A stretch of 64,000 nt of DNA from Neoechinorhynchus agilis (GCA_051530055.1 CM121341.1:1824711-1888710), one strand, 5' to 3'; shown: positions 766-58,424, counted from the first letter of the stretch. Numbers and translations are program-made. The notes: a model not told the origin generated them from the sequence alone.

Positions 766-2103
766 ATGAATCCGAATAGCATTCCGCCTTTTCAACCTCC
801 ATACTTACCACCGGCTCCGTATGCGGATTTATACAATGCGCAAATCAGAAGACATTTACAATTCACGACAGTTTTCAATCAGCCTGAAATGATGCTTCCT
901 CATCCGATGTTGCAAATGTACCAAGGACCCACGGCGCCCTTCATGAATTCATATTCTGGAACGATGATGGGTTTACCCAATTTGTACCAAGTCCCTTACA
1001 TTTTGACTCCGTGGCAGGAATACCCGCGGGCGAATTATAGTAGAAATTATAAGGTAGTAGATCGTCCGGGACACGGACCTTACATTTTACAAGGTATAAT
1101 TTAATCGAGTATTAAAAGATTTAATGGATTAATTTATTAAGGTTTAAATACTAGGCACCATGCGACAACTCCTGGTCAAGTTGATAATTTGATTACGATT
1201 GATAAGACTGACGATGTAGCAATTCAAAGCGAAGCAGATAAGAAGACCAACGAAGATGATGCTAAGGAAGCTAAAAAAGGAGATACGGAGCTTGCGATCT
1301 CCGCTGTCGCGAGTGCTCCACCGGCCCCGGCACAACCGAATGCTAAACAAGCCCAGGGAACCCCGCGTGTAGGTCCACATCCACTCTATCTCGAAATGCT
1401 GGAAAGGGAACGCAATTCGGGACAACAAAAAACCGATGTTTTTAATAGGCCAAGCAGAAGGCAGCGTGTACAAGTTCCTAATATTCCAGTGCCACCAATG
1501 GTTACGCCAGGAATTAGTAGACCGGACAGATTCCATAGATCGGCGGTACATTCAACAGGAAATGCTACTAGGGATTTTAGACGAGAGATCAGGACGGATT
1601 CTGCATTTAGAGAGTTACAAAAAGAGCATTTTAATCTAAAAAACCAAGTAAATACCCTAAAAAGAGAGATCGCAGAAATTAAAGCGCTTAAAAAGGATAC
1701 GGATTCAAATGTGATAACGAAGGAGATTCCTAGAGTTACTGGGAAGCAAGGGACAATGATCACCACACCCCAACATCCAAGGCAACAGAACTGGATTGGG
1801 CCACCGATCCGAAGATCGTATGTCATAGAGCAACCACGTAATGTTATAATGCAACCGCATTTACCAAACGTCTATTGCGGTCCACGACCGGGCTGTTTTT
1901 TAAACCCGCAGGAGCTAAACATGATAATGTCAGCTCACCACTTGCCGAACATTCCAGTTATGGAGCAGTACGTGTCGGAAACGCAAGTTGATCTATTGAA
2001 ACCCCCGAATTCTCCGGATAAGGCAGGAAATAAAGAGAACGCTGCAAAGGCCGAGAAGGATCCCGAAGAGAAGACCAAGGTTGAGAACAATGCTAACCTC
2101 TAG
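766..2103 (+). CDS. Hypothetical Pro/Gln-rich protein with a central coiled coil; probable two exons join(766..1093,1142..2103), about 429 aa
   Basis: ORFs 766..1104 and 1189..2103 join in frame through a 48-nt GT..AG intron (1094..1141), the size class of the METTL15 introns. Heptad L-x6-L-x6-L-x6-I in LQKEHFNLKNQVNTLKREIAEI. No family recognised. Confidence 0.45.
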
Positions 2104-5181: not shown

Positions 5182-5426
5182 TCCTACCTCACATATCGAC
5201 ATTTTTAGCTTAGATTTAATCTTGATTTTTAAAAAGTGATAGAAGTGACGGAATTATTTATTTAAAATTGATCTCTACCCCGTGTAACGGTCTAATTTTT
5301 TATAATGTTGATTTTATTGTAGTTTGCATAGTTTCCCATCTTTATGCTTCCCACAAGTATTTCTTATTCACGGAAATCAGGAGTATTCTTGAAATTATAA
5401 AACCTTTTCCTTAATATTTTCTCAAG

Positions 5427-7115
5427 ATGGATGGCCGAGCATCTCATTTGCTAGACCACCAACAGCAAGATAACGACATTATTGTCGACGACAGTGAAAG
5501 TCTTTTCCACCAATACTTTGGCGGAAATTCCACTCACGAGTCCTTGCCAGTTAATCAAGCACCACCAGCTCCCACACCGCCAATATACACCGTTAACGAC
5601 GATGAAGAAGTGCGTTTTGTTGCTTGTGGGAAATCCGAACTGCCACCTAAACGTCCCCGAAGGAGCGAACTTCGCTCAATACCTCAGACCTGCGATGCAT
5701 CGACTTCTCAAGCATTTTTTGGAGTAACAAAAGCAAGACACGAGATGGTAGTAAATCGAATGTGTGACATGCTACGTGACAATCAACAATTTTCCCAAAT
5801 CGAAGCTCGAAACTTTCAAAAACTTTGCCAAAAACGCGAAGCAATTCTCCAAGAAGCACCGGAGCATCTTCGTCCTGTTTTGATGGAAAGCGAACCTGCA
5901 TTGCTTCGAGAATATCTCCGATCCAAGGGAAATCAACCAACACGGATAATCAACCGCTCGTTTTCCGATCAATATATACCAACCACACTTCCGTCGCGAA
6001 CTCCTAGTGAGCTAAATGTTCAAATGCTGCAAGCAAGAGGCATCTATCCGCCTGTCCTAGAGCCAAACCATGAACATGAATTAAGACGGCTTGCTGATTG
6101 GTACAGACGTGCAAGTGAACAACAGCGAGCTGATTTTAATCATGAGCCAATGAGATATGTTATGAGAACTCGGGAAACCAACTATGGCACAAATGTAAGA
6201 CGATGTAGATCTGTTCAAGTTCCTGTAGGTCAGATGTATCCATCTCAACGTCATTCAGTTCGCTCGGAAACTTCTTCAAGTACTTCTAGCATTTATTATG
6301 CTCAATTGAGTGGTGTGCGAGTTTTGGCGAAACCACTAAACGCTCAATCTACTCCTGTTAAGCAACAAACTTATCCATTTCGACAACCAACCCGCTTTCA
6401 GTCGTCGTCTCCGATTGATATTCGTGTCCCAAGTCAATATCAACGGATGAGCACTGCTTTGTGTAGCAATCAACCTCGACCAATTCGAGAACAGCGTCCA
6501 ACGAATACTGAAACGAATAGTTCTTTGAGTCCTACAACCCACAAAAAGCTCCAATCTTTTGAAGAACTTAATTATTATCTAAGTCATCCTGAGAAAAGGA
6601 CTTCAAAATCAAGTGAAGACACATTGTCCACTCGGCAATCTACGACCAATTCCTCCCTCAATAGCTCTAGTACGAGTGAGTCCACCACGAAATCTGTGGC
6701 TGAAACTCCGGACACGCCTCGACGACACCGATCAATTTATAGTGAGGAATTTATGGAGCGCGTTAAACAGGAAAGTGAGGAAATCATGAGCCAACTTAGG
6801 AATCAAGACTTGGAAGACGAAACGCGTCGCGAGAATGAGGATATCAAGATCATCGGAGTTAATTGCGATCCGTACGAAATTTGGAATAACGTTCCAGAGC
6901 TCCATGATCAAACGTATGATCAATTGTATTTTAAGAATTGCGATTCTCTAGCGGATATTGCTAGGTATAAGTTTTGTGCTGACAATGGGCATCTACCGCA
7001 AGCTGTAAATTCAATGGAAGAGGCTGAGAAACTAATCTATGAAATGAACGCACCACTCGTGGGACGGACGGGGACTCCTGAAATTGACGAAGATGATCCT
7101 TGGAACGTCGATTGA
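5427..7115 (+). CDS. Hypothetical single-exon Ser/Thr/Arg/Gln-rich protein, 562 aa
   Basis: 1.69-kb ATG-initiated ORF, more GC-rich than its flanks, with ctcaag directly before the ATG. No family recognised. Confidence 0.6.
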   Translation: MDGRASHLLDHQQQDNDIIVDDSESLFHQYFGGNSTHESLPVNQAPPAPTPPIYTVNDDEEVRFVACGKSELPPKRPRRSELRSIPQTCDASTSQAFFGVTKARHEMVVNRMCDMLRDNQQFSQIEARNFQKLCQKREAILQEAPEHLRPVLMESEPALLREYLRSKGNQPTRIINRSFSDQYIPTTLPSRTPSELNVQMLQARGIYPPVLEPNHEHELRRLADWYRRASEQQRADFNHEPMRYVMRTRETNYGTNVRRCRSVQVPVGQMYPSQRHSVRSETSSSTSSIYYAQLSGVRVLAKPLNAQSTPVKQQTYPFRQPTRFQSSSPIDIRVPSQYQRMSTALCSNQPRPIREQRPTNTETNSSLSPTTHKKLQSFEELNYYLSHPEKRTSKSSEDTLSTRQSTTNSSLNSSSTSESTTKSVAETPDTPRRHRSIYSEEFMERVKQESEEIMSQLRNQDLEDETRRENEDIKIIGVNCDPYEIWNNVPELHDQTYDQLYFKNCDSLADIARYKFCADNGHLPQAVNSMEEAEKLIYEMNAPLVGRTGTPEIDEDDPWNVD

Positions 7116-10205: not shown

Positions 10206-10259
10206 CCACCAAAATCCACTCGATGCTTACATGTCTCTTGATGATTAGAGATTGCCGAC
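10206..10259 (-). mobile_element. 54-bp fragment of a Penelope-like GIY-YIG coding sequence at the left edge of the satellite
   Basis: Identical to 31101..31154, which encodes part of SAISNHQETCKHRVDFGG on the minus strand. Confidence 0.85.
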
Positions 10260-20715: not shown

Positions 20716-21462
20716 TGCAAGCACGGGGTCCCCATCTCCGTCCCAAAAATAACTTTGACAAATTGGGAATCCAATGGATCCCCCGCTAGATGTCAAACTA
20801 GCGAGAACAGATACTACACTTTGATCTTAGCCTTTCGGCAAGAAGCGATAGCTTGGAATAGGGCACTCGAGTTTTAACTCTAAACATATATCCGAATTAA
20901 AAACTTTCTGATTCAATACGTAATTCGAAGACATTTGCTGAAAGAACACAAATTCCCTTAATTTTTTTTATTGTTTGTGATGAAATTAATTATTGTGTTT
21001 TAAATTTTTCTTATATGTTTTTTGTGTATGCCATAGTTTGGACGGATTCGTTTTATTGTTTCGTATTAGAATTCTAATTCTGATTTGACGGTTGTTTCAC
21101 TTAATTCATTCTTTTAGCCGTAATGTTCGTGAATTGCAATCGTTTTCCATTCTCTTTGACCCATTGAAGTGAATGTGGCGAGTGTTGGGCGATTGAGTTT
21201 TTTGATAGGGTTTGCGACTGGTGAACTAAGAATCACTCGGAGTTGATTAAACTGATTACTCCTGATCTCTGGTTTTCCATTCACGTAAATAGCAATCGAC
21301 TTAGGCTTCCAAATCGGAACGCATAAAGCTGTCAGTCTTAGTGGTTTTTCGAACTCAGGCAAAAATTGGTTGAGTGTTTTTCCGGTTTTCTAATAGTAAA
21401 GATCGATCACAATTTATGATTTGATTGTACGTTGGCGAATCCTGTCCCCGGTTTGTGAAATA

Positions 21463-21915: not shown

Positions 21916-21968
21916 TTTAGCTTTCCTCTTGAGAATACCCGCACCTCGAGCTCCCTCGCCCAACCTAG

Positions 21969-24205
21969 ATGCCTGCTGCAGTAGCCACTCCCAAATTTTT
22001 GGAGTATTCGAACGTATCATCGACCGACATTGATATTAAAACTAAAGGGAAATTAAGATTTGAAACGGATAAAATCATTTTCACTAACACGAGTAACAAG
22101 GAGGATAAAGTGACGACCGTCTTTGAAGTTAAAGACATAAAAAATGCATATTTTACTCAGACGGCTCAAGGTTACATGCTCATTCTACTCACAGCATTCT
22201 CTCCCGACGACGATAATAGCATTAGTAGCGATGATCCTCATGTACTTGCTAGCCACTTCAGAGGCTTAAGCCTTGAAGACCTTGATTCGGTTCAGACGTT
22301 CATGCGAAGGAACTATGAGATTGAAATGAATGAAATGTTACGATCTGTCAAAGGCGCTGATGCTGGTGTCTTCGATCTTGAATTCGCGTATAACTCAATG
22401 CGTTTCATGGTCGATCAAAAACTTGGATTTGAGATTCCTCTCGATCAAGTCAATTCATGTGATCTTTGCAGTAAGAATGAAACGGTCATCAAGTTTCGTC
22501 CGAGGCAACAGGATCCTTGTCTGGTTGAAATCAGGTTCAGCATCCCTCAAGGCGGTGGCGGGGACGAGGAACGAATGGAGCGCTACCGACAAAAACTTAC
22601 TCGCTTAGCATCCGCTGAGGTTACCGAAAGCATTTGCGATGTTCCACAAATGTCATTTATGGTACCTAGGGGAAAGTATGACATGAAACTCGTGAAAGAT
22701 TTCGTTGATCTGCACGGTAAATCGTTTGATTATAAAATCATGTACAATCAAATCGCAATGGTATTTATTCTTGAAAATCCTCTGAAACGACATGTATATT
22801 TTGCTTTTAAAGTATGTGCATAGACTTCTGTTGAAGAGATTTTCACAATGATGGGTGAATTCTGTCTTAAAATACGTATTTTTCAAGAATATTTTAATCA
22901 GATATTATAGCTGTTCGAGCAAATTTTTGTGTATTTCACAAATGCCTGAGAATATAACATAACAAAATTTTCAAATCCTTGATCGTCTTGAGAAAGAAAT
23001 GATTTTTGCTCGATTTTTTTACTTTTGTAAATTTTGAAATATCTTGACCTCTCTTTTTTTGAACTGATGATGAACTCATTTACCGGGTATAGACCTAAAT
23101 AACACTTCTAACCATTTATGATTAATTTTTAATAATAGGTGAAAAATTCCCTTACCTGCTCAATTTATTATTTATTTTCCCAATTTCAATCACATAATTC
23201 ACGGGTATTTGAAAATAATTTTTAATGGTTTTCTGAAAATTATTTCAATGCTGTGGCGATTTTTTCTCCAGTTGGCGCAAATGTTTTCTCCCGTAACTTG
23301 TGAATTAACTTCTTAACCCTTGCTCCTTTTGTGAAATATCAATTTCTTATATAAATCAAAAATTCTGTTACACAAAATTTTAATTCTATTTCTTTTAATA
23401 AAGCGAACTTAATTGGCTCAAATTTTTTTGATATCATCTAACCTTGAATTCTCTGTGCAAATTCATGACTATATTAAATGATCACTAGCTAATCTTTTTT
23501 AATCGATTTCTCAACGGTAGCTTTGCGATATATCCACCTGTTCGACAAGGTCAAACCCTTTACCCGTTCGTAATTCTTCAATGCGAAAGTGATGAAGAGA
23601 TTGAACTGGACGTTAAACTCCCGGGTCATCCGGCCAACGATGATGAAGAGAAAATGAAAGGCGCAACTTATGAAGTTCTGGCTGAAATTCTCAAGCAGAT
23701 ATTACCTAACAAATTCAACGATCAATGTACATATCGATCAGCAGTAAACACAGAAGCTGCCTTTGTAAATGCTTCAATTCGTGCATGCAGTGGTCTCTTG
23801 TATCCCATGGACAAAGGAATCCTATTTATGCATAAACCTACATTCTATCTACCATATGAAGAAATGCTTTTAGTAGACATGGGTTCTGGAAACGAACCGA
23901 TTCAATCATCATCGAGTCTTAAAACGTTTATGGTCGAGATTAAGATGAAAAACGGTACGGCGTATTCGTTCAGTAGTATTGACCGAGAGGAGCAGAAACC
24001 ATTGGCTTCATTCATAAAGTCCAAGAGGGTAGACGTGAGTTTTATTAAAGGCGACACTACGACTGGAAATGTCGATAAGTTGATAAATGCGTTGGGTATT
24101 GATGAAGATAGCGCTGATGACGGAGATGATGAAGAAGATGAAGATTACGAGGCAAAATCGGCTGGTGCAGAGTCCGATGAAATAGAAAGTGATCACGAAG
24201 AGTGA
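21969..24205 (+). CDS. SSRP1: FACT complex subunit SSRP1/Pob3; exons about 21969..22811 and 23528..24205, about 506 aa
   Basis: LEYSNV..GKLRF start, KNETVIKF, EIRFSIP, PRGKYDMK, LHGKSFDYKI, PPVRQGQTLYPF, SGLLYPMDKGILFMHKP, FSSIDREE, acidic tail. The exon 2 acceptor is anomalous (see findings). Confidence 0.95.
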
Positions 24206-25062
24206 AGAAGACTGTTGGAAACTCATGAGCGGCGTGAAATTTATATGTTGTCTTCATAGGGAAGTCTTGCCGTATCCATATCTTGGATTTTGATACACAG
24301 GAGTACTTTTTAAAGGAAATCTTCACATTTTCTACCACGTCCTCCTTAAGCCTTTTGTAATATGCCTAAATTTAAGCCCAAATACTTAATGAAAAATATC
24401 ACACTTTTCGCTTCCTTTATTTGTAAAATATAGATTTTGCAAAACTCTATCAGCATCAATGTTCATTTGAAGCAATCGGGTGTGCTACCTCCATAACCCA
24501 ATCACAATTGTTTAGCGAACGAAAAACACACAGCGTTTAACGTCTCTTTGAATGTAACATCTTCTTTCCCCTTTTGCTTCTCTTGATCTCCGGTGCTTCT
24601 AGTTGAGATTTCGATTGGTCCAATCTGACTGGCAAATCAGCATCTTCTTGTTTTCGCCCTTCTTCGGACTTCTTTATCCTATGGCTGTCCTCATCAGAAC
24701 TAAAGAAAGAAAATTGTTAGAACATTTTTCCAATTTTTACCGAACACGAAACGTATTTTTAAATGTTATTGCAACTGTCCATAATTTCCTAGATTTTTTA
24801 TTATTTATATGACGCTGAATTTTTTTAAAGAATGTAATAAGTAAATCTTTAGAATCGCAGTTTACTTAAATCGGCAACACTTTTAGTTGGTGCTAACGGT
24901 TAATCGGTCATTTTATTGACCTAATGTAACCCTTCCTCGGAAATTAGATATCTAAATCGATCGAATAAATTTATAATTAAACTTTAGCGCTTTGCCGATA
25001 GCTACGGCGAGCGCGAGGGATGATTTTCACTTTCAGATCATTCCGGTTTTGCTAAATTTCGA

Positions 25063-25461
25063 ATGATATCTGACTCGTTTGCAAAGTTCCACGCTCATTG
25101 CCGCACTCTTTATGAGATGTCTGATGATTTCGAAACGTTCGTCGGTCAATTGCCTTCGACGTCAAATAACTCTCCACCGGCAACTGCGTCTTCACAATCA
25201 AGGTTGAACGCTTTAAATCAAGACCTTGTCCAGAGTTTGATGGAAGCAATTCTCGCCGATAATGTATCGAAAAATAAATGCGACAAAGTCAAACTGTCAT
25301 CGGAGGCAATAATCGCTTATACGGCAGCGATTAATTTGATTACCGATGAGCTAATTGCTAGAAGCGTTGATTGCCGTTGTGCTGAGGGTAATGGAAGTAA
25401 TAATGAACTGAATGAAAGCCATCTTTTCTCGGTTATGGCGCAAGTTCTGTTTGATGTATGA
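25063..25461 (+). CDS. CENPX: Centromere protein X (MHF2/STRA13), histone fold
   Basis: DLVQSLM..KVKLSSEAIIAYTAAINLITDELIARSV..ELNESHLFSVMAQVLFDV parallels CENP-X KTKVSGDALQLMVELLKVFVVEAAVR..LEKVLPQLLLDF. Confidence 0.75.
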   Translation: MISDSFAKFHAHCRTLYEMSDDFETFVGQLPSTSNNSPPATASSQSRLNALNQDLVQSLMEAILADNVSKNKCDKVKLSSEAIIAYTAAINLITDELIARSVDCRCAEGNGSNNELNESHLFSVMAQVLFDV

Positions 25462-25551
25462 ACTGTTATTACATTTCAATTAAAGTGGATGCAAAAAAAC
25501 GGTTTTGAGTTAATTTCGGATGAAAAGCTTTTAATCGTCCTCGTTTAAGAT

Positions 25552-27342
<1,791 letters not shown>

Positions 27343-27678: not shown

Positions 27679-28843
27679 TTATTGTTCGTTTTGCGACTGC
27701 TGCTGCTGTTCATTATTGAACATTTGAGCTATAAGCGCATTGCTAGACTGCTGCTGTCCACCGCCGCCGAAACCAAAAGAAGGTAGACTGATGGTATTTA
27801 GGGCATTAAAAGCGGCAGCGTACAGATTCTGTTGTTGTTGCTGTTGAAAAACCCAATTATTGGGAAAGTCCTGCTGAATTGGTGCTGGTTGTTGAAGAGT
27901 TTCTTCTTTGATTTCATTGGTTCTCAGTTTTCCCAAACATTTAAGTAGATCATTATACGCCGTCCGATATTCGTCGACCTGAGTATTACATGAGATCTTT
28001 TTCAGTGCTTCTAACCGTTTTTTAACTTCTGGATGTTCAACTAAATGTTCACTTGATTGAATAGTAACGCAACACATAGCTTCATGTTCCTTCGTGGCCA
28101 TATACCGATAAATCATATGTTTGATTAAACTGGTGGTATTCACGAAATTGGACACTGGCCGGGCGACAACACTCCTTTGTACCCGTTTAACCACGTCCGC
28201 ATACTCGTTTCTCATTCGTCCTCTGAACTCACTCGATACTTCGTCGTCGTCTTCTTCTAAATCAATCAATGACACGAATACTCGTTCGTCCCGAAGAATA
28301 TCTTCTACTGGTATAAGCCCATGACGCATCTTCATTCTTTCTATGATCGCATTATATTCATTAATAAGACTGGCATGGTCTTCTTCTCCTTGTGGTTCCG
28401 GTTGGATCGGGTCACCGAGAGCACGTCGCTTTCCACCGCCGTCGCAATCAACGCGATCCAACTCTTCACGGATCAAACTTTCAAAATCGAGATCATCGTT
28501 GCGGTTGTACCTATGCGTTTGCTGCTGTTGTTGCTGCTGCTGCTGCTGTTGGTAGTGGTGGTGGTGGTGGTGGTAATCGTCAATAACATGCTGATCGATG
28601 ATCGATACCTCGTCGGGGACAGTTGGAGCGTCAAGGTCCCGGTATGCACGTTTCTTGTTCTTCGTTGGAGACCGACGGCGGTGGTGGTAATGATTGTGGT
28701 GGTGGTGGTGGTGATGGTGCCGTCTACGGTCAACTGACGACGTCGATTCAGCCAACGTTAGACCAGGCGGGTGAAGCGGACCGACTTCTTGGTGCCGAAA
28801 ACTACTTTCCAAGTTCAAACGGTCTTCAGTCGTCAAAAACGCA
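27679..28843 (-). CDS. Hypothetical His/Gln-rich protein; large 3' exon, probably spliced to upstream exon(s) near 29073..29432
   Basis: 385-codon ORF with poly-His and poly-Gln tracts, helical middle region, and an aaacag acceptor at 28844. No family recognised. Confidence 0.55.
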
Positions 28844-29072
28844 CTGTTTATGCATCGGTGGCCAACGAAAACAAACGGAGAAAAGTTTGAAGGGTTTTAA
28901 AAATGCCATCATGCGCTCCATAACAATCAGTTTCAAAAGGTGCAAGAAAGAGCGGTTCGGCCGTGACTATAAAAAGGAACTAGTAAATATGAGAATCCGA
29001 TGAGAGCAAAGAACTTATGTCTGTCGCCATTCTCAGCGAGCTCTCGTCGGCATGAGAGTTAAAAGAAAAAAA

Positions 29073-29432
29073 CTAACAAAAATCCGCCACTACCACGACA
29101 AGAGCACATTGGCCTCCAACGTGCTTTAAGAACTCATGAGGAATTCTGCGTCTTCTTTGAACCGATATTCTTTGATTAAGCGCGGGTCGCTGCTGTTCCC
29201 AACTTCTAGGAGCATAATACGAATTAAGTGGAGGCGCATATTGCTGATCGTTGAACATTCCGTGAAACCGGTAGCTTTGTTGATTCGACTGGATTCTCGG
29301 TCCGAATTGGTGCCTAATAGGACGCAAATATACATCTGGACCTGGCGGGAAACGAGGATCTTGATGGGTCATTTCGTTATGAGTAAGGAAGTTCGAAGAG
29401 TTTTCGCGGATAACGTGATTCTTCCGCGACAC
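29073..29432 (-). CDS. Probable 5' exon (Pro/Gln/Arg-rich) of the 27679..28843 gene
   Basis: Open frame of similar composition on the same strand; splice junctions not resolved. Confidence 0.3.
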   Translation of the reverse strand: MSRKNHVIRENSSNFLTHNEMTHQDPRFPPGPDVYLRPIRHQFGPRIQSNQQSYRFHGMFNDQQYAPPLNSYYAPRSWEQQRPALNQRISVQRRRRIPHEFLKHVGGQCALVVVVADFC

Positions 29433-30344
29433 TCTATGACGTGTTCCGAAATAGTGGAAGATTCTTCCGTATGTAGTCTATGACGTGTACTAAAGTTTTT
29501 ATATCCCGCGCCGGGAATATTTAGATTACACGCGAGCGGTTGTGTGCGTCGTCACGAAATATCGGATTCTGATAAATCACTTCAATTTTTTCCGAATGCT
29601 CGAGCAAAATTGTAGTATTTTTTCCATATGTCCATTTGACCGTGTATGGAAAAAAGACTACCGGCAGAGCCACACTTATAAAACATTCTAAGAAATTGAA
29701 GTAATTTATCAAAGAAAAAATCTGGTGCAAAGTGTTATTTAGAAAATCTTCCTTTGGTAAATAATTTTTTTATTAAAATTCATCATCAGCTTGTTCTTTA
29801 AAGACTATCTTTAGCACCAACATTATGGCAATATTAACTTTTGTAGGAATAAAATTCACTTTTATTCATATCTCGCTCTCAACAAAACCAACTATGGACA
29901 ACATCTTTACATTGGACACGATGGTGTGTCTCCGAAATATCGGGAAAAGATAAACAATTCAGAATTTAAACGAAATTTGAATCGCAAATTTTTAATGACG
30001 CTTACAATTAACGTTTAATATGGTGCTAATCGACATGTGGGACATCGATTCTCACAAACATTGAGATAAAATAGTTTCGTGTATTCTAAGGAAATTTAAT
30101 GGAAAATCACACTTTTCAATGGGTCTAATCGATTATTAATAATAATTCGTGATATGTCTATAAAGTCGAAACATTCCCACGTTTATGGAATGACCTTTAA
30201 AGAGCTCAATATAAAACAATCTAAGCTTTTAAGCCTAGCCAAAACTCTAAGGTTTTTAATTAATTTTTTCACGATTTCGTGCCATCGGGGAATCGGCTCT
30301 TAAACTCAACAAATTTGTCACAGGTTGAATCTAATAATTTTCCT

Positions 30345-32075: not shown

Positions 32076-32119
32076 TGACTTACCCGAAAGATTTTCTATC
32101 GATGACTTCAGGAAATGTT

Positions 32120-33860
32120 TGTGTTAAAAGCATTAAACCGTAGAATTTTATTTGTTGTTTATTTTTTAGATAAATGCCTGATTCCGTAACACAACTCTTT
32201 GAATACTTCACGGAATCATCGATAGAAAATCCTTCGGGTTAGTCAAAGTATAATTTTGGTGAAAATGCTCCCGGGTTACACATTTAAAACTTACAAGCAA
32301 TGACTGATGAGTCGAGGTTACCTCGGGAAATATCTCCAATAAATCAAATATACTATTACCGGGAGTATTTTCACCCAAATTATGCTTCTATAGATGTTTG
32401 TGTTAAAAGCATCAAACAGTAGAATTTTATTTGTTGTTTATTTTTCAGATAAATGCCTGATTCCGTAACACAACTCTTTGAATACTTCAGGGAATCATCG
32501 ATAGAAAATCCTCCGGGTTAGTCAAAGTATAATTTTGGTGAAAATGCTCCCGGGTTACACATTTAAAACTTACAAGCAATGACTGATGAGTCGAGGTTAC
32601 CTCGGGAAATATCTCCAATAAATCAAATATACTATTACCGGGAGTATTTTCACCCAAATTATGCTTCTATAGATGTTTGTGTTAAAAGCATCAAACAGTA
32701 GAATTTTATTTGTTGTTTATTTTTCAGATAAATGCCTGATTCCGTAACACAACTCTTTGAATACTTCAGGGAATCATCGATAGAAAATCCTCCGGGTTAG
32801 TCAAAGTATAATTTTGGTGAAAATGCTCCCGGGTTACACATTTAAAACTTACAAGCAATGACTGATGAGTCGAGGTTACCTCGGGAAATATCTCCAATAA
32901 ATCAAATATACTATTACCGGGAGTATTTTCACCCAAATTATGCTTCTATAGATGTTTGTGTTAAAAGCATCAAACAGTAGAATTTTATTTGTTGTTTATT
33001 TTTCAGATAAATGCCTGATTCCGTAACACAACTCTTTGAATACTTCAGGGAATCATCGATAGAAAACCTTGTTAGTCAAAGTATAATTTTGGTGAAAATC
33101 TCCCGGGTTACTTTAAAACTTACAACAATGACTGATGAGTCGAGGTTACCTCGGGAAATATCTCCAATAAATCAAATATACTATTACCGGGAGTATTTTC
33201 ACCCAAATTATGCTTCTATAGATGTTTGTGTTAAAAGCATCAAACAGTAGAATTTTATTTGTTGTTTATTTTTCAGATAAATGCCTGATTCCGTAACACA
33301 ACTCTTTGAATACTTCAGGGAATCATCGATAGAAAATCCTCCGGGTTAGTCAAAGTATAATTTTGGTGAAAATGCTCCCGGGTTACACATTTAAAACTTA
33401 CAAGCAATGACTGATGAGTCGAGGTTACCTCGGGAAATATCTCCAATAAATCAAATATACTATTACCGGGAGTATTTTCACCCAAATTATGCTTCTATAG
33501 ATGTTTGTGTTAAAAGCATCAAACAGTAGAATTTTATTTGTTGTTTATTTTTCAGATAAATGCCTGATTCCGTAACACAACTCTTTGAATACTTCAGGGA
33601 ATCATCGATAGAAAATCCTTCGGGTTAGTCAAAGTATAATTTTGGTGAAAATGCTCCCGGGTTACACATTTAAAACTTACAAGCAATGACTGATGAGTCG
33701 AGGTTACCTCGGGAAATATCTCCAATAAATCAAATATACTATTACCGGGAGTATTTTCACCCAAATTATGCTTCTATAGATGTTTGTGTTAAAAGCATCA
33801 AACAGTAGAATTTTATTTGTTGTTTATTTTTTAGATAAATGCCTGATTCCGTAACACAAC
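32120..33860 (+). repeat. Tandem array of six 279-bp units (one is 270 bp) plus a partial seventh; each has a hammerhead-like core and the MED21 acceptor and first 8 codons
   Basis: gataaatgcctgattccg at 32169, 32448, 32727, 33006, 33276, 33555, 33834. CTGATGA cores at 32304, 32583, 32862, 33132, 33411, 33690. Confidence 0.97.
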
Positions 33861-34249
33861 TCCAACTCCTCTTTAGCAAGCAAATAGAACTGATGTGCAA
33901 CACAATTGGATCTTCCCTACTAAAACAAGTACAATCGACCCCAAATGGAACCGAATCCCCAACGACAGCGTCCATACAAATCCATACTCTGATCTCAAAT
34001 GCAGTTGCTATAAAAGAAATAATAGAGAAATTACCTGATGCTCCTGAACGAAGGAGTGTCGACAGCCTTCACGCCGAGTTTTCCGAAGCACAAGAAGCAA
34101 CGAATGTAGTTCAGAAGGAATTGACAGATCTAAGAGACAACATCCATAAAATGCGAATGAGCATTGAGAAGTCCTTGGATTTTTTCGGACGTGATGTAGA
34201 ACTTAATGGAAAAGCCAAGCGAAACGATAATAATGATTCACAAACTTAG
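33839..34249 (+). CDS. MED21: Mediator subunit 21 (MED21/SRB7), 136 aa
   Basis: MPDSVTQLQ..LMCNTIG and LISNAVAIKEIIEKLPD parallel MED21 MADRLTQLQ..QFCNAIG and LIARTAKDIDVLIDSLPS; C-terminal coiled coil; expected length. Confidence 0.85.
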   Translation: MPDSVTQLQLLFSKQIELMCNTIGSSLLKQVQSTPNGTESPTTASIQIHTLISNAVAIKEIIEKLPDAPERRSVDSLHAEFSEAQEATNVVQKELTDLRDNIHKMRMSIEKSLDFFGRDVELNGKAKRNDNNDSQT

Positions 34250-34980: not shown

Positions 34981-37900
34981 TTAGTTGAAGTAGAAGCCCT
35001 TCTCCAAAGACGCACTAAGGAGTCGATCTTTAACTTCCTCTGGGCTTCGATACTCGGGCAACTTAAGAAAGTGGTTGCATGTGTTAACGGACGGATATCC
35101 TCCGTTTGACTTTCTAGCCACTGTGAGTCGTGGAACGAGTGCGGAGATGCCTCCTATCGGCAACGCCTTGCTACCGGTGATGAACTGCACAACACTAGCA
35201 CGCTCGGGTGGTGTCATGAGCATCATTGCGTCCAAAAAGTAAATAAAAGCCGCACTGTCTGGGTTATATCCATTTTTAGGATCAACACAGGCGATCAGTT
35301 CGTCTCTGGTCCATTCAGGATAACGCTCTCCACAAACAGCTAATAGGAAATCCTCCGGTGTAAATATTTCGAGAACCGATAAATCAACACAAAGAACTTG
35401 TTTAAGACCTTCTACGAGTGATTCAATTTGAGCTCGAACTCCGTCGTAAAGCATAAAATTCGCGAGACATACTACGTACTCATCGAGAGTCTCATTCCGT
35501 ATGATTTCTTCGGCCGGGTGTTCATCACTTATTGGACACATTGTGAATCCGTATGAATTAGATTGTGGATAGTAAGCAAAGTTTATACACATTTGTTCAA
35601 TGTCGGTCTGCATTGACTGTTCTTTGAGTTTAACAAGACTCGAAGCGTACGCGTGATCAATGCGGGATATCCGATAGATGGCATCATCGACATCACTGAT
35701 TCGTTCTTCCCCATTGAATTGACGATCGTTAACACAAGGACAAAACCGCTCAACGAGTTCAATACTAAGATCGAGATCGCAGAATCGTTGATCTAGCAAG
35801 CATTTTCCTAGCAGAACTCCAATACAGTGATAGTACCGGTTCACCATGTCAAGGCACATGTATTTTGGATATGGAGCCGGAAATAGATTTTGAGGATGAA
35901 CACACCCGCCTGAATCCCCATTCACGTTAGAAAGCCAAAGACCGAGTTTAGCGCGCTGTAGCTCATGAGAGTATAGCGTGTAAAACTCGAGGGTTGGTCC
36001 GAGACCTGTACCTTCTTCTCCATGCCACAGAACTTCCAATTCAGATTTGTGACGGGCATGATATTCAAACACGAGACTGCCTTGCTCAAGAAGAAGATCG
36101 GGATCACGATGAACCCAGAAACGTTCATGCCTCAATCGTCCTACGGATCTCGAGTAATTAAAATCAGCTGAATCGCCAGATTTACCCAACAGCCAGATCA
36201 TCGATCGCGTTGTGCCGAATCCCATGGCTCTAACCAAATTCATCCTGTTTGTGAGAGAAAACAGAAAAGGATGTTGTTTGACCAGTTCAACAAGTGGTTG
36301 TGGAATGCACCCGCCTGCAACGATCAAAGCTTGCTTTAGTTGTTCGTCTAGAATGCGAGATAAGCGTTCGCTCAAAAAACAGTCTGTCCATCCTTCACGT
36401 TGAGCATAGGTTGTACTAAGAACAAAAGAGTATACCCTTCGGAGAATTACGTAGATTAGTTCATTAAATGCGGCCGACTTATCCTGCACGAGAGCATTTA
36501 GAGAAACAGCATTCAATTTGGTTTGAGATGGTGAATCTGTAGGAAGTGTGTATTGGATACAGACCGCATCTTCCCAAATTCGAGTGTATTCCGCCGTGAC
36601 TTTATCTGGAGTGGATTGTTCCGCTCGAATTAGGCTGTCAACGAAGAACAGCAGAGGACGGTCAGGATCTGTTAGAGGAATTCGCAAAGCAGAATCTCCG
36701 AATCGTGTACTCAAATACATGTCCATTCTACGCCGCTGACTAGTTGGAGGAAGTTCTCGAGTTCTGGAGAGGTCGTCAACCATTGTTTCCATTGGAACAT
36801 CAGTATATATACCCACGTTTGTTCGTCCGGGCCTTGGATCGAACGCCGGAGCAAGAGCGCGAGATTTTCGATTAATTTCATTTCCAAAAAGATTGCTACT
36901 GCCATTATCACAAAACATTTGATAATCGTATTCGTCACCCATTATACGCGACAAATATGATGCCGGAAAAGCTTCCCGGAACCGCTGCCGACGTTGTCGT
37001 CGTTGATCTGCAGAGTAGGCGATGCCTGTTACACGCCGACTTGGATCATTTCGCCTAATCGCTGGTCCTCGCGAATCTGGGGCATCCGTTACAGGTGTCG
37101 GCATCGTGGGTGGGAACTCCGGATCGTCAATATCCTCATCAGTAGCTTCGTCTTCTTCCTCTTCATCATCTTCCTCATCATCATCGTCTTCCTCTGCTTC
37201 TTCGTCAAGGTCATCATGAACCGATTGAACAGCTACTGCTGCTGCCGCCGCCGCAGTGGTCGAGCCTACAGCAGCACTGGCTAACGTACCTAGATCACGT
37301 TCAAACAGATGCATGATTCTCGATGTTGGAATTCTATACCCGCCGCCACCGCCACTACCGCTAATAAATTCACCTTGATTCGAACTAATAGTGGTCGTCG
37401 CAGTTGGAATAAGACTCGCTGTGCTCGCCTGGTGATAAGCTTGTGGAGCTGTGAATATATCGTCCACGTGGATGGGCCAGTGAATATTGTCTATATCGTC
37501 CAAACCTGTCAGACCGAGCATCCTGAGGTCTTCGTACATAGCTGAGGGTCTTCGAATCGTTGCGCTTCCACCGGATTCGGTAGACTCCAGGGATGTAGAT
37601 GGCAACATAGGGTTGGGCGGTTGACGAGATGCAATGCGACCTGAACGCTGATTGCTACCACCACCACCGCCACCGCCGCCGCCGCCGCTGCCAGTGACCG
37701 TCGTAAACCGAATAGTCTGCTGTATACCACGAGCCATTCGACGTAAATACTCAGTTGGCACGCTACGTCGGATTGATTGTCTCAGATTGGTTGTCATTGA
37801 TGGACTTGATGCTGATGGCAAAAACGAATCATAAACGGTACCATGAAGAACCAGGTCGGATATTGATAGCGCAAACGGAACTTCGCTTGAGATGCCCTCA

Positions 37901-40900
37901 GGAGCGTAGAAGCGCAAATATCTGTATCGAATTGGATACGAAGAGTCGATCGGTAGACGCTCGTCAATTGCCCATGAAGTGATCTTAAAATAGTCCGTGT
38001 GCCGCGAAGATTCACACCAGGTGGAGTCTTAAATGTGGAAGAGAAATGGATGGAGAGGTTGGAGGGAGTTAGGGGGATTGTGAGACAAAGGTTAGTAGGG
38101 TGTTCAGATCATCCATAGAAGGAATTCGAAGAAAGTACTTCGGGAAATTCTGCGAATAAAAAGGAATCTTAAAGGACAGAATAATGAAGTTTTAAGATGA
38201 CGAAGCACCACAAACGACACCGATTGAGCATCAGTGATCAAGAAATTCCAGACGCCCAACACGCCACCCTCTACCAAGACCCCACGAGGCTTACGATATT
38301 GAAGTTGGACGAACCCTTGAGTCGGGTTGTGGCTAGCGTATAACGGGAAGCCAGATACTGAATTTGTATTGGGTTGCGGAGCGGATATTTTGAAGCCACT
38401 GATTATGAGACTGATTCCCAGATCGATTTGGAAATACGATGACAGCGCTTTTGCCGGTTCATTGAGGCTGAGAGTACACATTACTCTATTTTGAATTTCT
38501 CTTCCATAAGACATGGTTCCGTTATGAACCGTGCAGATTCGCATGATGTGCCCTTTGGTCGGATCGACAAAATCGTTGAGCCTATTTCCATTTTTCCCGA
38601 TAAACCGAATTATATCGATAGTACGCGTTGTAAACACGAGCGGGCGGTCTTTGAGGATCTTTTTATGAAACGTCAGGTCTTCTTTTTTGAGCAAGAACCA
38701 ATTTTTGACGAATCGATCGTATATTGCGTTCTCAAGCTGTTGAATACAAATAAAAGGATTCACAGCAACTGTGTACGGTCGCTCGAATTCTGGATGTTTT
38801 ACATTGATTCTTATACGTGCGGATAGACTTTTGATATCTATCGAACGTCTTCGTCGCCGAACTACGGCGATTCCACCCGTGTGACTCGTCGCAAAATACG
38901 AAGTTGCACTTGTCGGACTCGGGATACTATGAATGGGAAGAAACTCTGCGATTTTATCGTCATTGTCCAAAATGGATATAATGGCACGTACAATAACACT
39001 TGCATCGTCGTGAAAGAGGCCAGTGTACGAAGGTAGAAGTTCAAGATAGTGAAGAAGAGAACTTGTCTGAAGTTCGTATGTAGACAGATTCCCGCCTCTG
39101 AGAATCTCTATAAGTCTTGAGAATCCAGCAGGAGTGCAAATGTTTCGCAAGGTGGATTCTAGTTGAGCGGCAGCTGGACTTGGCGGAATATGAGCACCTG
39201 CGATGTATTGGTTATAGATCCGACTAATGGCTGATTTACTCGCGTCCTGAATTGCTTGATATGCAGGCTGGTACGAATTGTTAGCGATCGCTGCCATACT
39301 TAACATTGTTGCCTTCTCCTCTTGGCGATTCCAACTAGCAATAAATCCAAGAGGCGTCTGCGCCGTACTTGCATTTTGCTCTATTTTTATGAGACTGGGA
39401 AGGTCGCTAAAATTCCGAGCTTGCTTCATAGGAACATAAATATAAATGTGATCGGGTGTTTCAACGCCATTTGCATCAATACCTCCGGCTAAATGATGAA
39501 TACAAATTCCACAATCAAGTGACCGAACTCGAGAACTTGCGTTTCTGAATAAATTCTCAAAAGAATGTGGACGTGTGACCGTACTTTGATCTTTTAAATA
39601 CTCAAGACGATGAATAAACTCAATGCAGCTTGAAAGAGATATTCTTGAGCGAACGTCCCATCCGTCGATTCCATTGATTTTACCGTCAGCGCGAACTCGG
39701 AACTGAAAACTCGGTTGAGGTGGTTGGTCTTTAAATGAAGCGAGCATGACCTTCCAAATATCAAACGCGAGTTGGAGGTTTTTATGCCACACAATCACGT
39801 GAGAACCTGATTCGACTATTCTCCAATTCCCGTACACGTACGGTCCGCTGGTGATCGGCGCAAGTGGAGTTTGCGTTATTGATGTAGTTTGAAAGTTTGC
39901 TGGAATCGTGGCTTGTTGCTCCTGAGAAGCTCCGATGTTCAGCTCAGAATAAAGTTCGCCTAGTTTACTTATGATTCCAACGCGGGATAAACGTGGGAGG
40001 AATCTATGAGGCGATAACGCAAAAAGATCTTCAATTAGACGAAGACATGTATAAAAGGCTTCTGGGTCATCATTTTGTTTCTTGATTAATTGTACAATAT
40101 CCGACTGGATTTGTCGACCGAGTGGTCCGTCAAGAATTATAAGAAGTGAATCTTCGCTTAGATTAGCGAATACTCGTCTAAAGATCCTAAGTCCACGAGC
40201 CGTAGTTGATTGAACTTCCATGAGTCGATTTACAATATCGGTGCATTGATCGTAAGACATTGGAAGATGCGATTTTCGTGGTTCAAAGTAAATAACAGAT
40301 TCTTGAAAGAGCTGTGAGCTTGATTCCGTACGGAGAGTCATAGCCGATTCCGAAGGGGTCATTCCACGTGAGTCCACAGTGTCCGGTGATGCTCCAAGTT
40401 GAAGAAGAGTTCGATAGACTGCTTTATTGTTCGTATACGCAGCACAATGGAGAGCGGATCCCTTTTTGCCAAAACGTGGATTTGCACCAACGGACAATAA
40501 ATACTCAACGTGGTACTCGGTCCCGAACGCAGCGGCCCAACTGAGAAGCGAATCCCGATGCTCATTTAGTGCGTTTACCTGCTCGCAAATGTCCGAGTTG
40601 TTTTTAAATCTGCTTAGATCTGAGTTTCCGTTCATAATCGCCTGCACGAGCAACTCATGAACGTCTGTCCATGTAGATGGCGACGTAGAATGCTGTGGAC
40701 GTCGATATTGTTCAAAGACAATACCCACAATTGAGTCAGCAAGACGATGATCTAGCGGGGTACCTTCTACTCCAAACAGAAGTCTTGGTTCAATATCAAG
40801 GCGGTCATGAACTATACGTGAGAGAATATCTGGTTGTGAGCTAAGTGCTTCAGGCACGGGTCTCGGAATAGGAGCACCGTTTTCGATCAGAATAGGTAAG

Positions 40901-41511
40901 CATTCGATCACCTTTTGAGTAATAATTGGTATTTGCGATTGCGTTAAAGGACTGAGGTCATATCGTGCCAATTTAGCACAGCAACTCCTATCTGTACACA
41001 ATGATTTGAACACAACCAGTGCACTTTTCACCGTGTCATTATGAAGGCGATTGGCGTATTTGGCCAATAGGATAAATAGATTGTCTGTTGCTTCAGTTGG
41101 GACGCGAATATGTGAGACCTTCTCAAAGATCTTCACAATCTGTTCAGACAGTTCGCGGCTTATTCTCTCATCTATATCCTTCGGCAAAAGTCTAGAGCTG
41201 AGAGCTTCAAGACCGTGAGGAACAGCAATCAAACGTTGTATGCAATCATTGGAAAGATCGAGAAAGTAAGTGATCGCTCGTGATGTTACTTCTAGCAGAG
41301 TGTCAGGAGCATTCGCGTCCAGGAATAGATGAAGCAACGCTGGTATAAACAATCGTGGAGCGTATTTCTGGAGGCATCGGTCAACGTTTTCTGTCATTAG
41401 GATAGCCATACAGAGGTGATCAGCAGCGGTCGCTTGAAGAGCGCGTTCCGGACCACATTCGTTAGAGTTTAGCCACTCTAACAGCACGGCAGCGTCCGTC
41501 TCAGTATCCAT
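34981..41511 (-). CDS. HECTD1: HECT E3 ubiquitin ligase HECTD1; exons 41511..38295 and 38027..34981, about 2087 aa
   Basis: N-terminal LLEWL..LCMAILMTENVDRC..FIPAL..FLDANAPDTLLEVTSRAITYFLD; ankyrins LLSWAAAFGT..SALHCAA; a SUN-like domain split by a phase-1 GTAAG..TAAG intron (38294..38028); HECT end YPSVNTCNHFLKLPEY..EKGFYFN. Confidence 0.95.
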
Positions 41512-42918
41512 GGTCGTGTAAGCGTGTGCAGTAGGATTTAGTCTAAAATCGAAGCCTTCAATAGATGGGCGCTTGATTGTTGCGTGGCAACGATGACGAT
41601 ACAGCGAGAAAAGTAGGCATGTTTTCAATGATTTCCGATAGAAAACCTATGGGCGTGTAGAGACGTTTTCTAAAGAAACCAAGAGCCGTAGAGTTCTTTC
41701 GAGAAAACGTCAATAAAAGTGTTCAAGCTGTTCAATTTTGTACAGAAAGATAGTACGTAAGTTTAGGTTTCCTGTTCTAACGAAATAGACCACGTTTCCA
41801 ACTTTATCATCAAAAAAAGTGTCCATGTCAATAGAAACTGGAAGATAATCTCGGTCTCTCGCATAAAAGGATCGCGTTTCTGCTAGACTCTCTCAAAAGC
41901 GGTGAAGTTCGCCGTTCTTTTAACTGTGCACTAGCAATCCAACGAGCTTATATACAAAGCAATAGGCTACAAAAGAAGCGATATACAAAAAGTTTACCAG
42001 GTCTAAAAGCATCCTGGATGTTTTTTTCTTAACATTCGACTGTACATTGTGGACGACATCATCAAAATATGTTTAATGGCTACTCAGTAGGGCCAACGAG
42101 CGTGCAGGTAGCATCACAAGGTTGTCAGGCAAAAAATACGCCAAAGGGTGTGAAGCAAAAGGTACTGAATGCATGCCATGCAACGCTGATACAACATCGA
42201 CGAGGCAGAATAGAAGAAATAATATTCACAATCAGGGCAGCAGGAACGTTAATAGTGGATGCTTGTCGTGGAAAACGATTCGGGTTTACATAACGTATTG
42301 ATAGCGAGAAACGACAACAATGGATTAGTTCTGCTTTAAAAAGCCGTCAGTGGAAAATGTCTAAAATCAGTGACTTATTCTATGAGAAATGCCTCAAATG
42401 AAATTTCAAAGAACAGTCAGGAATATCTCTAATGTTGTGTGTGGAGAGCGAACAAAAACACTAAATTTCATCAACGGCAATAGTTAACGTTTAAAAAAGA
42501 CAAACACTTCAACGAGTTCTTCAAATTACACGCTTAAAAAACAAGTGCTTGCTACACAAATCTAAGTTCTGAATTCGCAAAGAATCTCGTGAATACTGAT
42601 TTAAAAACCAACACTCTAGCAAAAGATTATGATGATCGCTCGGATGAAACGTATTTTGAATTCAGACATTTCGACAGAGGGAGCCTCACCCGCCCCCATC
42701 AATAAGTCATTGTTAACTCCATAGCGAAATATCTCAATTCAAATATGTTTTATCCGATGGATTATAACATCTCCAACTAATCATTCAGAAAGATTTTCTC
42801 ACAAATATCTTTCCTAATAGTTGGAATTGTTGTGCAACGGAATATGATCACAACATCATCAACTATATCATTAAGACAAATTAGGATTCATGTTTAGGTC
42901 TTTACCGGTAAATAATTC

Positions 42919-49343: not shown

Positions 49344-49555
49344 TTGAAACAATAATGATTAATTTCTTTACAGCAACTATAACTGTTCATGGTTTGTTTA
49401 AGGTCATTGAATCCAAGATTGTTTGTAAGTTTTGTGCTTTTAAATCTCGTTTTGGATTTTTTCGAAGAAACTTTATTTGTTGACGTCAGATTTCTTATCG
49501 ATCAGTTGAAATTTTTAACCACTATTGAATTACGTGTACTTTTTTTTGTAGAACG

Positions 49556-58294: not shown

Positions 58295-58424
58295 CGGAAA
58301 TCGATGCCATTGGATTAAAAATCAATAAGTTATTTCACGCACATATAATGCACGCCCGCGTTTGCGATGACTGTTTTGTTTGTCGAATAAAACCTTTCTA
58401 AAGGTCACTGATACGATTACAACA
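58290..58424 (+). mobile_element. Putative 3' LTR of the Gypsy element
   Basis: TGT...ACAACA termini with an internal AATAAA, directly after the pol tail. No matching 5' LTR found. Confidence 0.35.

What the first reader, a model, noticed from the sequence alone, without database searches (positions are those of the whole stretch)
25021..25554. Splice acceptors directly before start codons and a 90-bp gene gap: signature of SL trans-splicing and operons
Seen: a pyrimidine-rich tract plus AG precedes the ATG in seven genes, with gaps of 0 nt (ORF5427 ctcaag; SSRP1 cctag), 2 nt (METTL15 tttaag), 4 nt (MED21 ttttag; ZFC3H1-like tttgtag), 26 nt (CENP-X tttcag) and 31 nt (HECTD1 ttttag). CENP-X and METTL15 are co-oriented with 90 bp between stop and start. 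Known: this is how trans-spliced genes and operons look in nematodes, flatworms and tunicates. Inference: this genome uses SL trans-splicing, with a CENP-X-METTL15 operon.
Basis: partly seen in the sequence, partly recalled or inferred. Interest (0 to 1): 0.7.

Follow-up and report, generated by a model that had tools for sequence, protein, structure and literature searches.

The report
Splice acceptors abutting acanthocephalan start codons
In this thorny-headed worm (Neoechinorhynchus agilis) most genes in the window have a splice-acceptor-like site just upstream of the start codon, which suggests but does not prove spliced-leader trans-splicing, a process not yet reported for this animal group.

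Summary
The window is Neoechinorhynchus agilis (Acanthocephala), chromosome CM121341.1. An AG preceded by at least 7/10 pyrimidines lies within 4 nt of the ATG in 5 of 9 genes. The same is true of about 7% of control ORF-first ATGs (binomial P about 1.6e-4; threshold-free rank test p=0.003). In the distant acanthocephalan Pomphorhynchus laevis, the two orthologues I could fetch carry an acceptor at the same distance from the ATG: SSRP1 at 0 nt and HECTD1 at 31 nt (joint chance about 4e-5). These are therefore very probably real 3' splice sites.

Whether they take a trans-spliced leader or a cis 5'-UTR exon cannot be settled from DNA. I found no SL RNA gene in the window and had no transcripts. 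Bdelloid rotifers, which are close relatives, trans-splice more than 50% of mRNAs. No acanthocephalan paper in the library mentions trans-splicing.

The operon claim is weaker. The spacer has ATTAAA and an acceptor, but METTL15 carries an in-frame TGA and is annotated as two genes. The MED21 site lies inside a tandem repeat derived from a Penelope-like element.

Verdict: partly supported. If confirmed, this is a new member of a known kind.

The parts
5405..5426 (+). Pyrimidine tract + AG directly abutting the ORF5427 start codon (gap 0; AAG acceptor)
   Evidence: The annotated single-exon CDS starts at this ATG.
5427..7115 (+). ORF5427, a 562-aa protein with no Pfam match
21950..21968 (+). C-rich pyrimidine tract + TAG directly abutting the SSRP1 start codon (gap 0)
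   Evidence: The P. laevis orthologue has 'aatattttacag|ATG', also gap 0.
21969..24205 (+). SSRP1/POB3-family gene (519 aa, one 677-nt intron at 22812-23488); equals ACOME3_000333 of N. agilis
25021..25036 (+). 'tttcactttcag' acceptor-like site 26 nt upstream of the CENP-X-like ATG
25063..25461 (+). CENP-X-like CDS (132 aa). The CENP-X domain covers residues 61-131 only. The 60-aa N-terminal extension has no homology support.
   Evidence: Pfam PF09415, 24.6 bits, just under the cutoff of 25
25462..25551 (+). 90-nt spacer between the CENP-X stop and the METTL15 ATG. It contains ATTAAA at 25479-25484, an A-run at 25493-25499, and the acceptor-like 'tcctcgtttaag' (AG at 25548-25549), 2 nt before the ATG.
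   Evidence: direct reading
25552..27342 (+). RsmH/METTL15-family gene, annotated as two genes (25552-25919 and 25938-27342) because of an in-frame TGA at 25917-25919
33812..33834 (+). 'tttattttttag' acceptor-like site 4 nt before the MED21-like ATG. It lies in the last unit of a 279-bp tandem repeat, and every unit carries the same acceptor plus the ATG and 8 codons.
33839..34249 (+). MED21-like CDS (136 aa). The database annotation starts at the internal ATG at 33893.
41543..41557 (-). 'cttcgattttag' acceptor-like site 31 nt upstream of the HECTD1 ATG
   Evidence: The P. laevis orthologue has 'cttcatatccag', also 31 nt upstream.
34981..41511 (-). HECTD1 gene (2087 aa). Its one 267-nt cis intron (38294-38028) uses an AAG acceptor. 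The N-terminus aligns with the N-termini of orthologues.
49533..49551 (+). 'ttttttttgtag' acceptor-like site 4 nt before the ATG of the HAT-repeat (ZFC3H1-like) gene
49556..50488 (+). First ORF of the ZFC3H1-like gene. HAT repeats are detected further downstream at 51130-52167.
766..2103 (+). Annotated 429-aa gene without the signature. The nearest AG is 24 nt upstream with 6/10 pyrimidines.
27679..29372 (-). Annotated 479-aa gene without any acceptor-like site within 47 nt of the ATG. TATAAAA lies about 130 nt upstream, so it looks like a conventionally initiated gene.

Best explanation
The window comes from the acanthocephalan Neoechinorhynchus agilis. The pyrimidine-tract+AG motifs just upstream of most start codons are functional 3' splice sites. 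The most likely mechanism is this. The primary transcript's 5' segment (the outron) is removed, and a short capped leader from a separate SL RNA is joined at the AG. The mature 5' UTR is then the leader plus 0-31 nt.

What is shown: the motifs exist, they are enriched at true gene starts, and their distance to the ATG is conserved in P. laevis. What is inferred: that they are spliced at all, that the donor is an SL RNA rather than an upstream exon of the same gene, and that some genes (for example 29372-27679) are not trans-spliced.

A weaker sub-claim, about 0.3, is that the CENP-X-like and METTL15-like genes are co-transcribed. In that model the upstream mRNA is cleaved and polyadenylated after ATTAAA (25479), and the downstream one is trans-spliced at 25549.
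For: (1) All seven sites are verified.
(2) Enrichment: 5/9 genes against 6.9% of controls within 4 nt (P=1.6e-4), robust to thresholds, rank test p=0.003.
(3) Start codons are independently supported. The annotated CDS starts coincide for ORF5427, SSRP1, CENP-X, METTL15 and HECTD1. The HECTD1 N-terminus aligns from residue 4-6 with residue 3-5 of orthologues.
(4) Conservation: P. laevis SSRP1 has 'ttttacag|ATG' (gap 0) and P. laevis HECTD1 has 'catatccag' at gap 31, the same gaps as N. agilis. The flanks are not alignable, and the per-position rate of such motifs is 0.2-1.7%, giving a joint chance of about 4e-5.
(5) AAG acceptors, as in two of the sites, are used by a bona fide cis intron here.
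(6) Phylogenetic prior: bdelloid rotifers trans-splice more than 50% of mRNAs (PMC1925144). Acanthocephala fall within Rotifera/Syndermata.
(7) The fraction of genes affected (5-7 of 9) and the very short distances to the ATG match what is known of nematode trans-splice sites (own knowledge). That is higher and tighter than is usual for cis 5'-UTR introns.
(8) The 90-nt spacer holds a poly(A) signal variant upstream and the acceptor downstream.
Against: - No SL RNA gene is present in the window or the fetched flanks. This is weak evidence, because SL genes usually sit elsewhere in arrays.
- No transcript evidence of any kind was reachable.
- The monogonont rotifer B. plicatilis showed no SL in an EST survey, so the trait is not universal in the clade.
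- The N. agilis, P. laevis and Seison genome papers do not mention trans-splicing, although they assembled transcriptomes.
- For MED21, the repeat units upstream each carry a donor-like 'CGG|GTTAGT', which offers a ready cis partner.
- The sample is nine genes.
- For the operon: the genome is very compact, so short gaps are expected; METTL15 has an in-frame TGA; and operons have not been reported in rotifers (PMC7986045).
Confidence: 0.55

Rival explanations
1. The AGs are acceptors of ordinary cis-spliced 5'-UTR introns. Each gene would have a short non-coding first exon further upstream, and the intron would end just before the ATG.
For: The DNA signature is identical to a trans-splice acceptor. 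Positional conservation between N. agilis and P. laevis fits conserved 5'-UTR introns equally well. Upstream of MED21, every 279-bp repeat unit offers a donor-like GTTAGT about 210 nt before the next acceptor. No SL RNA gene was found.
Against: Five to seven of nine genes would need a 5'-UTR intron ending 0-31 nt from the ATG. That is unusually frequent and tight for cis introns, especially in a 46-Mb genome (own knowledge). For METTL15, the first exon and promoter would have to lie inside or upstream of the CENP-X-like gene, because only 88 nt separate the stop from the acceptor. Close relatives are known trans-splicers.
Confidence: 0.27
2. The motifs are not spliced at all. They reflect T-rich promoter or 5'-UTR composition, the in-frame stop codons (TAG/TAA) that bound ORFs, and post hoc selection by the reader.
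For: The 26-nt and 31-nt cases are individually unremarkable, since 21-33% of control ATGs have one. In SSRP1 the 'AG' is part of the in-frame TAG that delimits the ORF. Thresholds were chosen after inspection. Only nine genes were tested.
Against: Controls that share the ORF-boundary bias (the first ATG after a stop) still reach only about 7%, against 5/9 observed. The exact distances recur in P. laevis with unrelated flanking sequence. There is no common -3..-1 context that would suggest a Kozak-type explanation.
Confidence: 0.1
3. The CENP-X-like and METTL15-like genes are simply close neighbours with separate promoters, or METTL15 is a decaying pseudogene. They are not an operon, whatever happens at the other genes.
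For: The genome averages about 3.4 kb per gene (46.2 Mb, 13,655 genes) and 31.6% of it is coding. METTL15 has an in-frame TGA at 25917-25919 in both plausible exon models and is annotated as two genes. Operons are unreported in rotifers.
Against: There is a co-oriented 90-nt gap with ATTAAA 18 nt after the stop and an acceptor-like site 2 nt before the next ATG. That leaves little room for an independent core promoter plus 5' UTR.
Confidence: 0.6

Closest known systems
SL trans-splicing in bdelloid rotifers (23-nt SL from ~105-nt SL RNAs; Pouchkina-Stantcheva & Tunnacliffe 2005, as summarised in PMC1925144)
   Same: It is the same larger clade (Rotifera/Syndermata). A large fraction of genes is affected, and the acceptors lie upstream of the ATG.
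   Different: The bdelloid SL sequence is absent from the window at up to 3 mismatches. No leader or SL RNA has been shown for any acanthocephalan. The monogonont B. plicatilis appeared to lack SL, so inheritance is not guaranteed.
Nematode (C. elegans) SL1 trans-splicing and SL2-resolved operons
   Same: A U-rich tract + AG lies a few nt from the AUG. The candidate operon has a ~100-nt intercistronic region with a poly(A) signal upstream and an acceptor downstream.
   Different: The phylum is unrelated. SL1 is absent from the window. Two of the seven sites use AAG rather than the nematode UUUCAG consensus. There is only one candidate gene pair and no evidence of a specialised SL.
Cis-spliced 5'-UTR introns of ordinary metazoan genes
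   Same: A polypyrimidine tract + AG shortly before the ATG, with conservation of position between species.
   Different: The frequency (5-7 of 9 genes) and the closeness to the ATG are higher than usual. For METTL15 there is almost no room for an upstream exon of its own.

Membership tests
SL trans-splicing system | An SL RNA gene: leader exon + GU donor + Sm-binding site flanked by stem-loops | tested here: not met
   None was found in the 64-kb window or the 4.5-kb flank. Rfam gave no hit at E<=10. Nematode SL1 and bdelloid SL are absent. The donor+Sm scan hit only Penelope-like-element sequence: a hairpin arm and GIY-YIG coding sequence. The 104-bp array is a U2-derived satellite with no special fold. 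There is no second copy of the U2 upstream motif. The rest of the 46-Mb genome could not be searched, so this does not exclude an SL gene.
SL trans-splicing system | The same short leader at the 5' end of mRNAs from many unlinked genes | not testable with these tools
   No N. agilis or P. laevis transcript contigs were retrievable. Exact-protein look-ups returned only the genome assemblies.
SL trans-splicing system | Unpaired 3' splice acceptors (pyrimidine tract + AG) shortly upstream of start codons in a large share of genes | tested here: met
   5/9 genes within 4 nt and 7/9 within 31 nt, against 7% and 21% of controls. The same distances occur in P. laevis for 2/2 orthologues.
SL trans-splicing system | The lineage is known to possess the machinery | tested here: inconclusive
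   Bdelloids have it; the monogonont B. plicatilis apparently does not (PMC1925144). No paper in the library reports on Acanthocephala or Seisonidea.
SL-resolved operon | Co-oriented genes with a short intercistronic region that carries a 3'-end signal for the upstream gene and a trans-splice acceptor for the downstream gene | tested here: met
   The gap is 90 nt, ATTAAA is at 25479-25484, and the AG at 25548-25549 lies 2 nt before the ATG. This is sequence-level evidence only.
SL-resolved operon | A polycistronic precursor transcript from one promoter, and a functional downstream gene | not testable with these tools
   No RNA data were available. The downstream gene has an in-frame TGA at 25917-25919, which may be an assembly error, a polymorphism or pseudogenisation.
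Cis 5'-UTR intron | An upstream non-coding exon with a donor site joined to the acceptor in the mRNA | not testable with these tools
   GT dinucleotides abound upstream. Only MED21 has an obvious repeated donor-like site (GTTAGT in each 279-bp unit).

The most novel reading that the evidence does not exclude
Acanthocephala use SL trans-splicing on most genes and also resolve at least some polycistronic units with it. That would place the origin of rotiferan SL trans-splicing at or before the bdelloid-pararotatorian ancestor, and would give the first operon reported in Rotifera/Syndermata.
Probability: 0.25. Interest if true: 0.6.

Novelty: new member of a known kind. Interest (0 to 1): 0.45.

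Why it matters
SL trans-splicing is scattered patchily across animals, and its gains and losses are debated. Within Rotifera it is documented for bdelloids and was not found in a monogonont. Showing it in Acanthocephala would date it within the clade. It would add a parasitic lineage with a 46-Mb, heavily reduced genome. If the CENP-X/METTL15 pair is co-transcribed, it would also provide the first rotiferan operon.

There is a practical side. Unrecognised leaders and outrons distort 5' ends in transcriptome assemblies and BRAKER gene models of these parasites. An SL would also be a handle for full-length cDNA enrichment. The public RNA-seq needed to settle the question already exists.

Tried and rejected
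(1) SL RNA candidates.
- The 104-bp x ~100 tandem array next to U2 (10258-20540) has a donor-like GT, a U-run and a hairpin. It is homologous to the 3' end of the adjacent U2 gene, folds no better than shuffles (z=-0.4), and its putative leader never occurs outside the array. Rejected as a satellite.
- The 'GTTAGTCAAAGTATAATTTTGG' family (donor + Sm-like) is one arm of a long hairpin in the Penelope-like-element repeat. Rejected.
- The 'GTAAGCATCGAGTGGATTTTGG' family is coding sequence of the element's GIY-YIG domain (Pfam 26 bits). Rejected.

(2) Taxon. Nematode, flatworm, tunicate, ctenophore and chaetognath were considered from divergence patterns. The question was settled as N. agilis by a 100% named hit. 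Accession searches in the literature found nothing.

(3) PDB sequence searches could not confirm the MED21 or CENP-X N-termini; there were no relevant hits.

(4) Rfam does not recognise the hammerhead-like core in the 279-bp repeat, and the local fold is not exceptional.

(5) The bacterial-type promoter/terminator scan of the spacer was uninformative.

(6) The primary papers on rotifer SL and the metazoan survey (MBE 2005, 2010) are not held in the library.

Full report
What and where. The window is eukaryotic: it has GT-AG introns and a full-length U2 snRNA gene at 20658-20849 on the minus strand (139.8 bits). Exact-protein look-ups place it on CM121341.1 (19.4 Mb) of assembly GCA_051530055.1. 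The 519-aa SSRP1 product is 100% identical to 'hypothetical protein ACOME3_000333 [Neoechinorhynchus agilis]'. N. agilis is an eoacanthocephalan. Its genome paper reports 46.2 Mbp, three major scaffolds, 13,655 BRAKER genes and 74 RNA-seq libraries (PMC12690905).

The proteins are extremely divergent. The HECT domain is only 30-40% identical to other animals. For both SSRP1 and the HECTD1 N-terminus, the next-best named relative is the acanthocephalan Pomphorhynchus laevis.

Checking the observation. All seven pyrimidine-tract+AG sites are present at the stated distances from the ATGs (0, 0, 2, 4, 4, 26 and 31 nt). Each has 7-9 pyrimidines in the 10 nt before the AG. The CENP-X-like stop (25459-25461) and the METTL15-like ATG (25552) are 90 nt apart.

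The gene identities are mostly right but weakly supported:
- SSRP1 and HECTD1 are solid.
- The RsmH/METTL15 family is supported by Pfam, 33 bits.
- CENP-X (24.6 bits against a cutoff of 25) and MED21 (20 bits against 37) are sub-threshold, and PDB searches added nothing.
- The CENP-X domain occupies only residues 61-131, so the first 60 codons, and hence that start codon, lack homology support.
- The HECTD1 N-terminus aligns with the N-termini of orthologues.

Is it more than chance? I used a control that shares the ORF-boundary bias: the first ATG after a stop, in ORFs of at least 30 codons, on both strands, with the gene starts removed (n=360). An AG with at least 7/10 upstream pyrimidines lies within 4 nt of 6.9% of these control ATGs and within 31 nt of 21%.

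I counted nine genes in the window. Two of them lack the motif: 766-2103 (+) and 29372-27679 (-). The second has a TATAAAA about 130 nt upstream. The observed counts are 5/9 within 4 nt (P=1.6e-4) and 7/9 within 31 nt (P=4.9e-4). The result holds for pyrimidine thresholds of 6-9 and several gap limits. A threshold-free score gives Mann-Whitney p=0.003. The 26-nt and 31-nt sites are not remarkable individually. The signal comes from the five sites at 0-4 nt.

Comparative evidence. I could fetch two P. laevis orthologues:
- SSRP1 reads 'aatattttacag|ATG', gap 0, as in N. agilis.
- HECTD1 has 'cttcatatccag' exactly 31 nt before its ATG, again as in N. agilis.

The flanking sequences are unrelated. 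Such motifs occur at 0.2-1.7% of positions in the P. laevis loci, so the joint chance is about 4e-5. A third P. laevis gene on the same contig has no such site. This is the strongest argument that the AGs are functional splice sites maintained since the split of Eo- and Palaeacanthocephala. Two of the N. agilis sites use AAG. The single cis intron of HECTD1 (38294-38028) also ends in '...catttaag', so AAG acceptors are used in this genome.

Trans or cis? DNA alone cannot tell.

In favour of SL trans-splicing:
- The proportion of genes involved is high, and the tiny distances to the ATG are typical of nematode trans-splice sites (own knowledge).
- There is almost no room for a separate first exon of METTL15.
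- Bdelloid rotifers add a 23-nt SL to more than 50% of mRNAs (PMC1925144), and acanthocephalans nest within rotifers.

Against, or neutral:
- A monogonont showed no SL in an EST survey.
- No acanthocephalan or Seison genome paper in the library mentions trans-splicing.
- I found no SL RNA gene. Rfam gave nothing at E<=10. Nematode SL1 and the bdelloid SL are absent.
- A generic donor+Sm scan hit only transposon sequence. The motif upstream of U2 has no second copy.

SL genes normally lie in arrays elsewhere, so their absence from 64 kb is weak evidence. I put SL trans-splicing at about 0.55, cis 5'-UTR introns at about 0.27, and no splicing at about 0.1.

The operon. The 90-nt spacer has ATTAAA 18 nt after the CENP-X stop, an A-run, and the acceptor-like 'tcctcgtttaag' 2 nt before the METTL15 ATG. 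That is the expected anatomy of an SL-resolved intercistronic region.

There are three reasons for caution. The genome averages about 3.4 kb per gene (46.2 Mb, 13,655 genes), so short gaps are expected. Operons have not been reported in rotifers (PMC7986045). The METTL15 reading frame contains a TGA at 25917-25919 under both plausible exon models, which is why the annotation splits it into two genes. That TGA could be an assembly error (ONT/Illumina hybrid from pooled worms), a segregating allele or decay. I rate co-transcription at about 0.3.

The MED21 site needs its own caveat. It lies in the last unit of a 279-bp tandem repeat (32115-33862, 6.3 copies, 98% identical). Every unit contains the acceptor, the ATG and the first eight MED21 codons, and then a donor-like CGG|GTTAGT. 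The repeat shares a hairpin and a hammerhead-like 'CUGAUGAG...GAAA' core with the flank of an adjacent Penelope-like element remnant. That remnant has an RT fragment at 31376-31936 and a GIY-YIG domain scoring 26 bits. Rfam does not score the ribozyme. Cis-splicing from an upstream unit is therefore a concrete alternative for this gene.

Novelty and verdict. The signature is real, enriched and conserved. If confirmed, it would extend a known mechanism to Acanthocephala, as a new member of a known kind, and possibly give the first rotiferan operon. The decisive experiment is computational and cheap: soft-clip analysis of the existing PRJNA1223661 reads at the listed coordinates.

Noticed in passing
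window 10258-20540 and 20658-20849(-): A ~10-kb satellite of ~100 copies of a 104-bp unit lies directly downstream of the U2 snRNA gene. The unit ('...CCATCGCGGATCAAC...TTGCAC...TGGTCCAGTT...') is homologous to the 3' end (stem-loop IV region) of that U2 gene, so the satellite appears to have arisen by amplification of the U2 3' part. It causes a strong AT skew (-0.35).
   Followed up: partly
window 32115-33862: A 279-bp tandem repeat (6.3 copies, 98% identical) ends inside MED21. Each unit holds the acceptor-like site, the MED21 ATG and 8 codons (a 21-codon pseudo-ORF), a long hairpin, and a hammerhead-ribozyme-like core 'CTGATGAGTCGAGGTTACCTCGGGAAA'. No Rfam hammerhead model scores it.
   Followed up: partly
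window 30760-32110: Remnant of a Penelope-like retroelement on the minus strand: an RT fragment (31376-31936), a GIY-YIG endonuclease domain with an internal stop (about 31290-30975; Pfam 26 bits), and a degenerate hammerhead-like flank (about 30860-30780). A piece of the EN-coding sequence is inverted at 31937-31990. A further copy lies at 10209-10250, abutting the U2-derived satellite.
   Followed up: partly
window 25917-25919: An in-frame TGA sits in the conserved part of the RsmH/METTL15-like gene. The public annotation therefore calls two genes (25552-25919 and 25938-27342). It could be an assembly error, a nonsense allele or a pseudogene.
   Followed up: partly
window 21969-24205 vs L004 10001-12031: N. 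agilis SSRP1 (519 aa) ends in an acidic tail and has no HMG box. The P. laevis orthologue (676 aa) has one (PF00505/PF09011). This looks like lineage-specific domain loss.
   Followed up: no
window 33839 vs 33893: The deposited annotation starts MED21 at the internal ATG 33893. The upstream in-frame ATG at 33839 gives an N-terminus 'MPDSVTQLQ' that resembles the MED21 N-terminus recalled from other animals. The true start was probably hidden by repeat masking.
   Followed up: partly
window 3504-4337, 43073-43917, 44753-46089, 58687-64000: Further satellites are present. One 139-bp family occurs at two places 39 kb apart and contains a perfect hairpin that draws spurious miRNA hits. There is also a 114-bp array, and a 141-bp array of at least 38 copies that runs off the window end.
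   Followed up: no
window 55997-58300: A degraded Ty3/gypsy-type LTR retrotransposon with a CCHC gag, protease DSGS, RVT_1 (36 bits) and RT_RNaseH_2 (30 bits), broken by frameshifts.
   Followed up: partly
P0001, P0002, P0095 (UniParc UPI00079DB776, UPI00079F7E6C, UPI00079E7084): The only close relatives (39-67% identity) of three N. agilis proteins are unnamed UniParc-only fragments from about early 2016 that do not start with Met. They may come from an unrecognised acanthocephalan, for example a contaminant in a host genome annotation.
   Followed up: no
window 29499-29505(-): The gene 29372-27679 has a canonical TATAAAA about 130 nt upstream of its ATG and no acceptor-like site. It is a candidate non-trans-spliced, conventionally initiated gene, useful as an internal contrast.
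   Followed up: no
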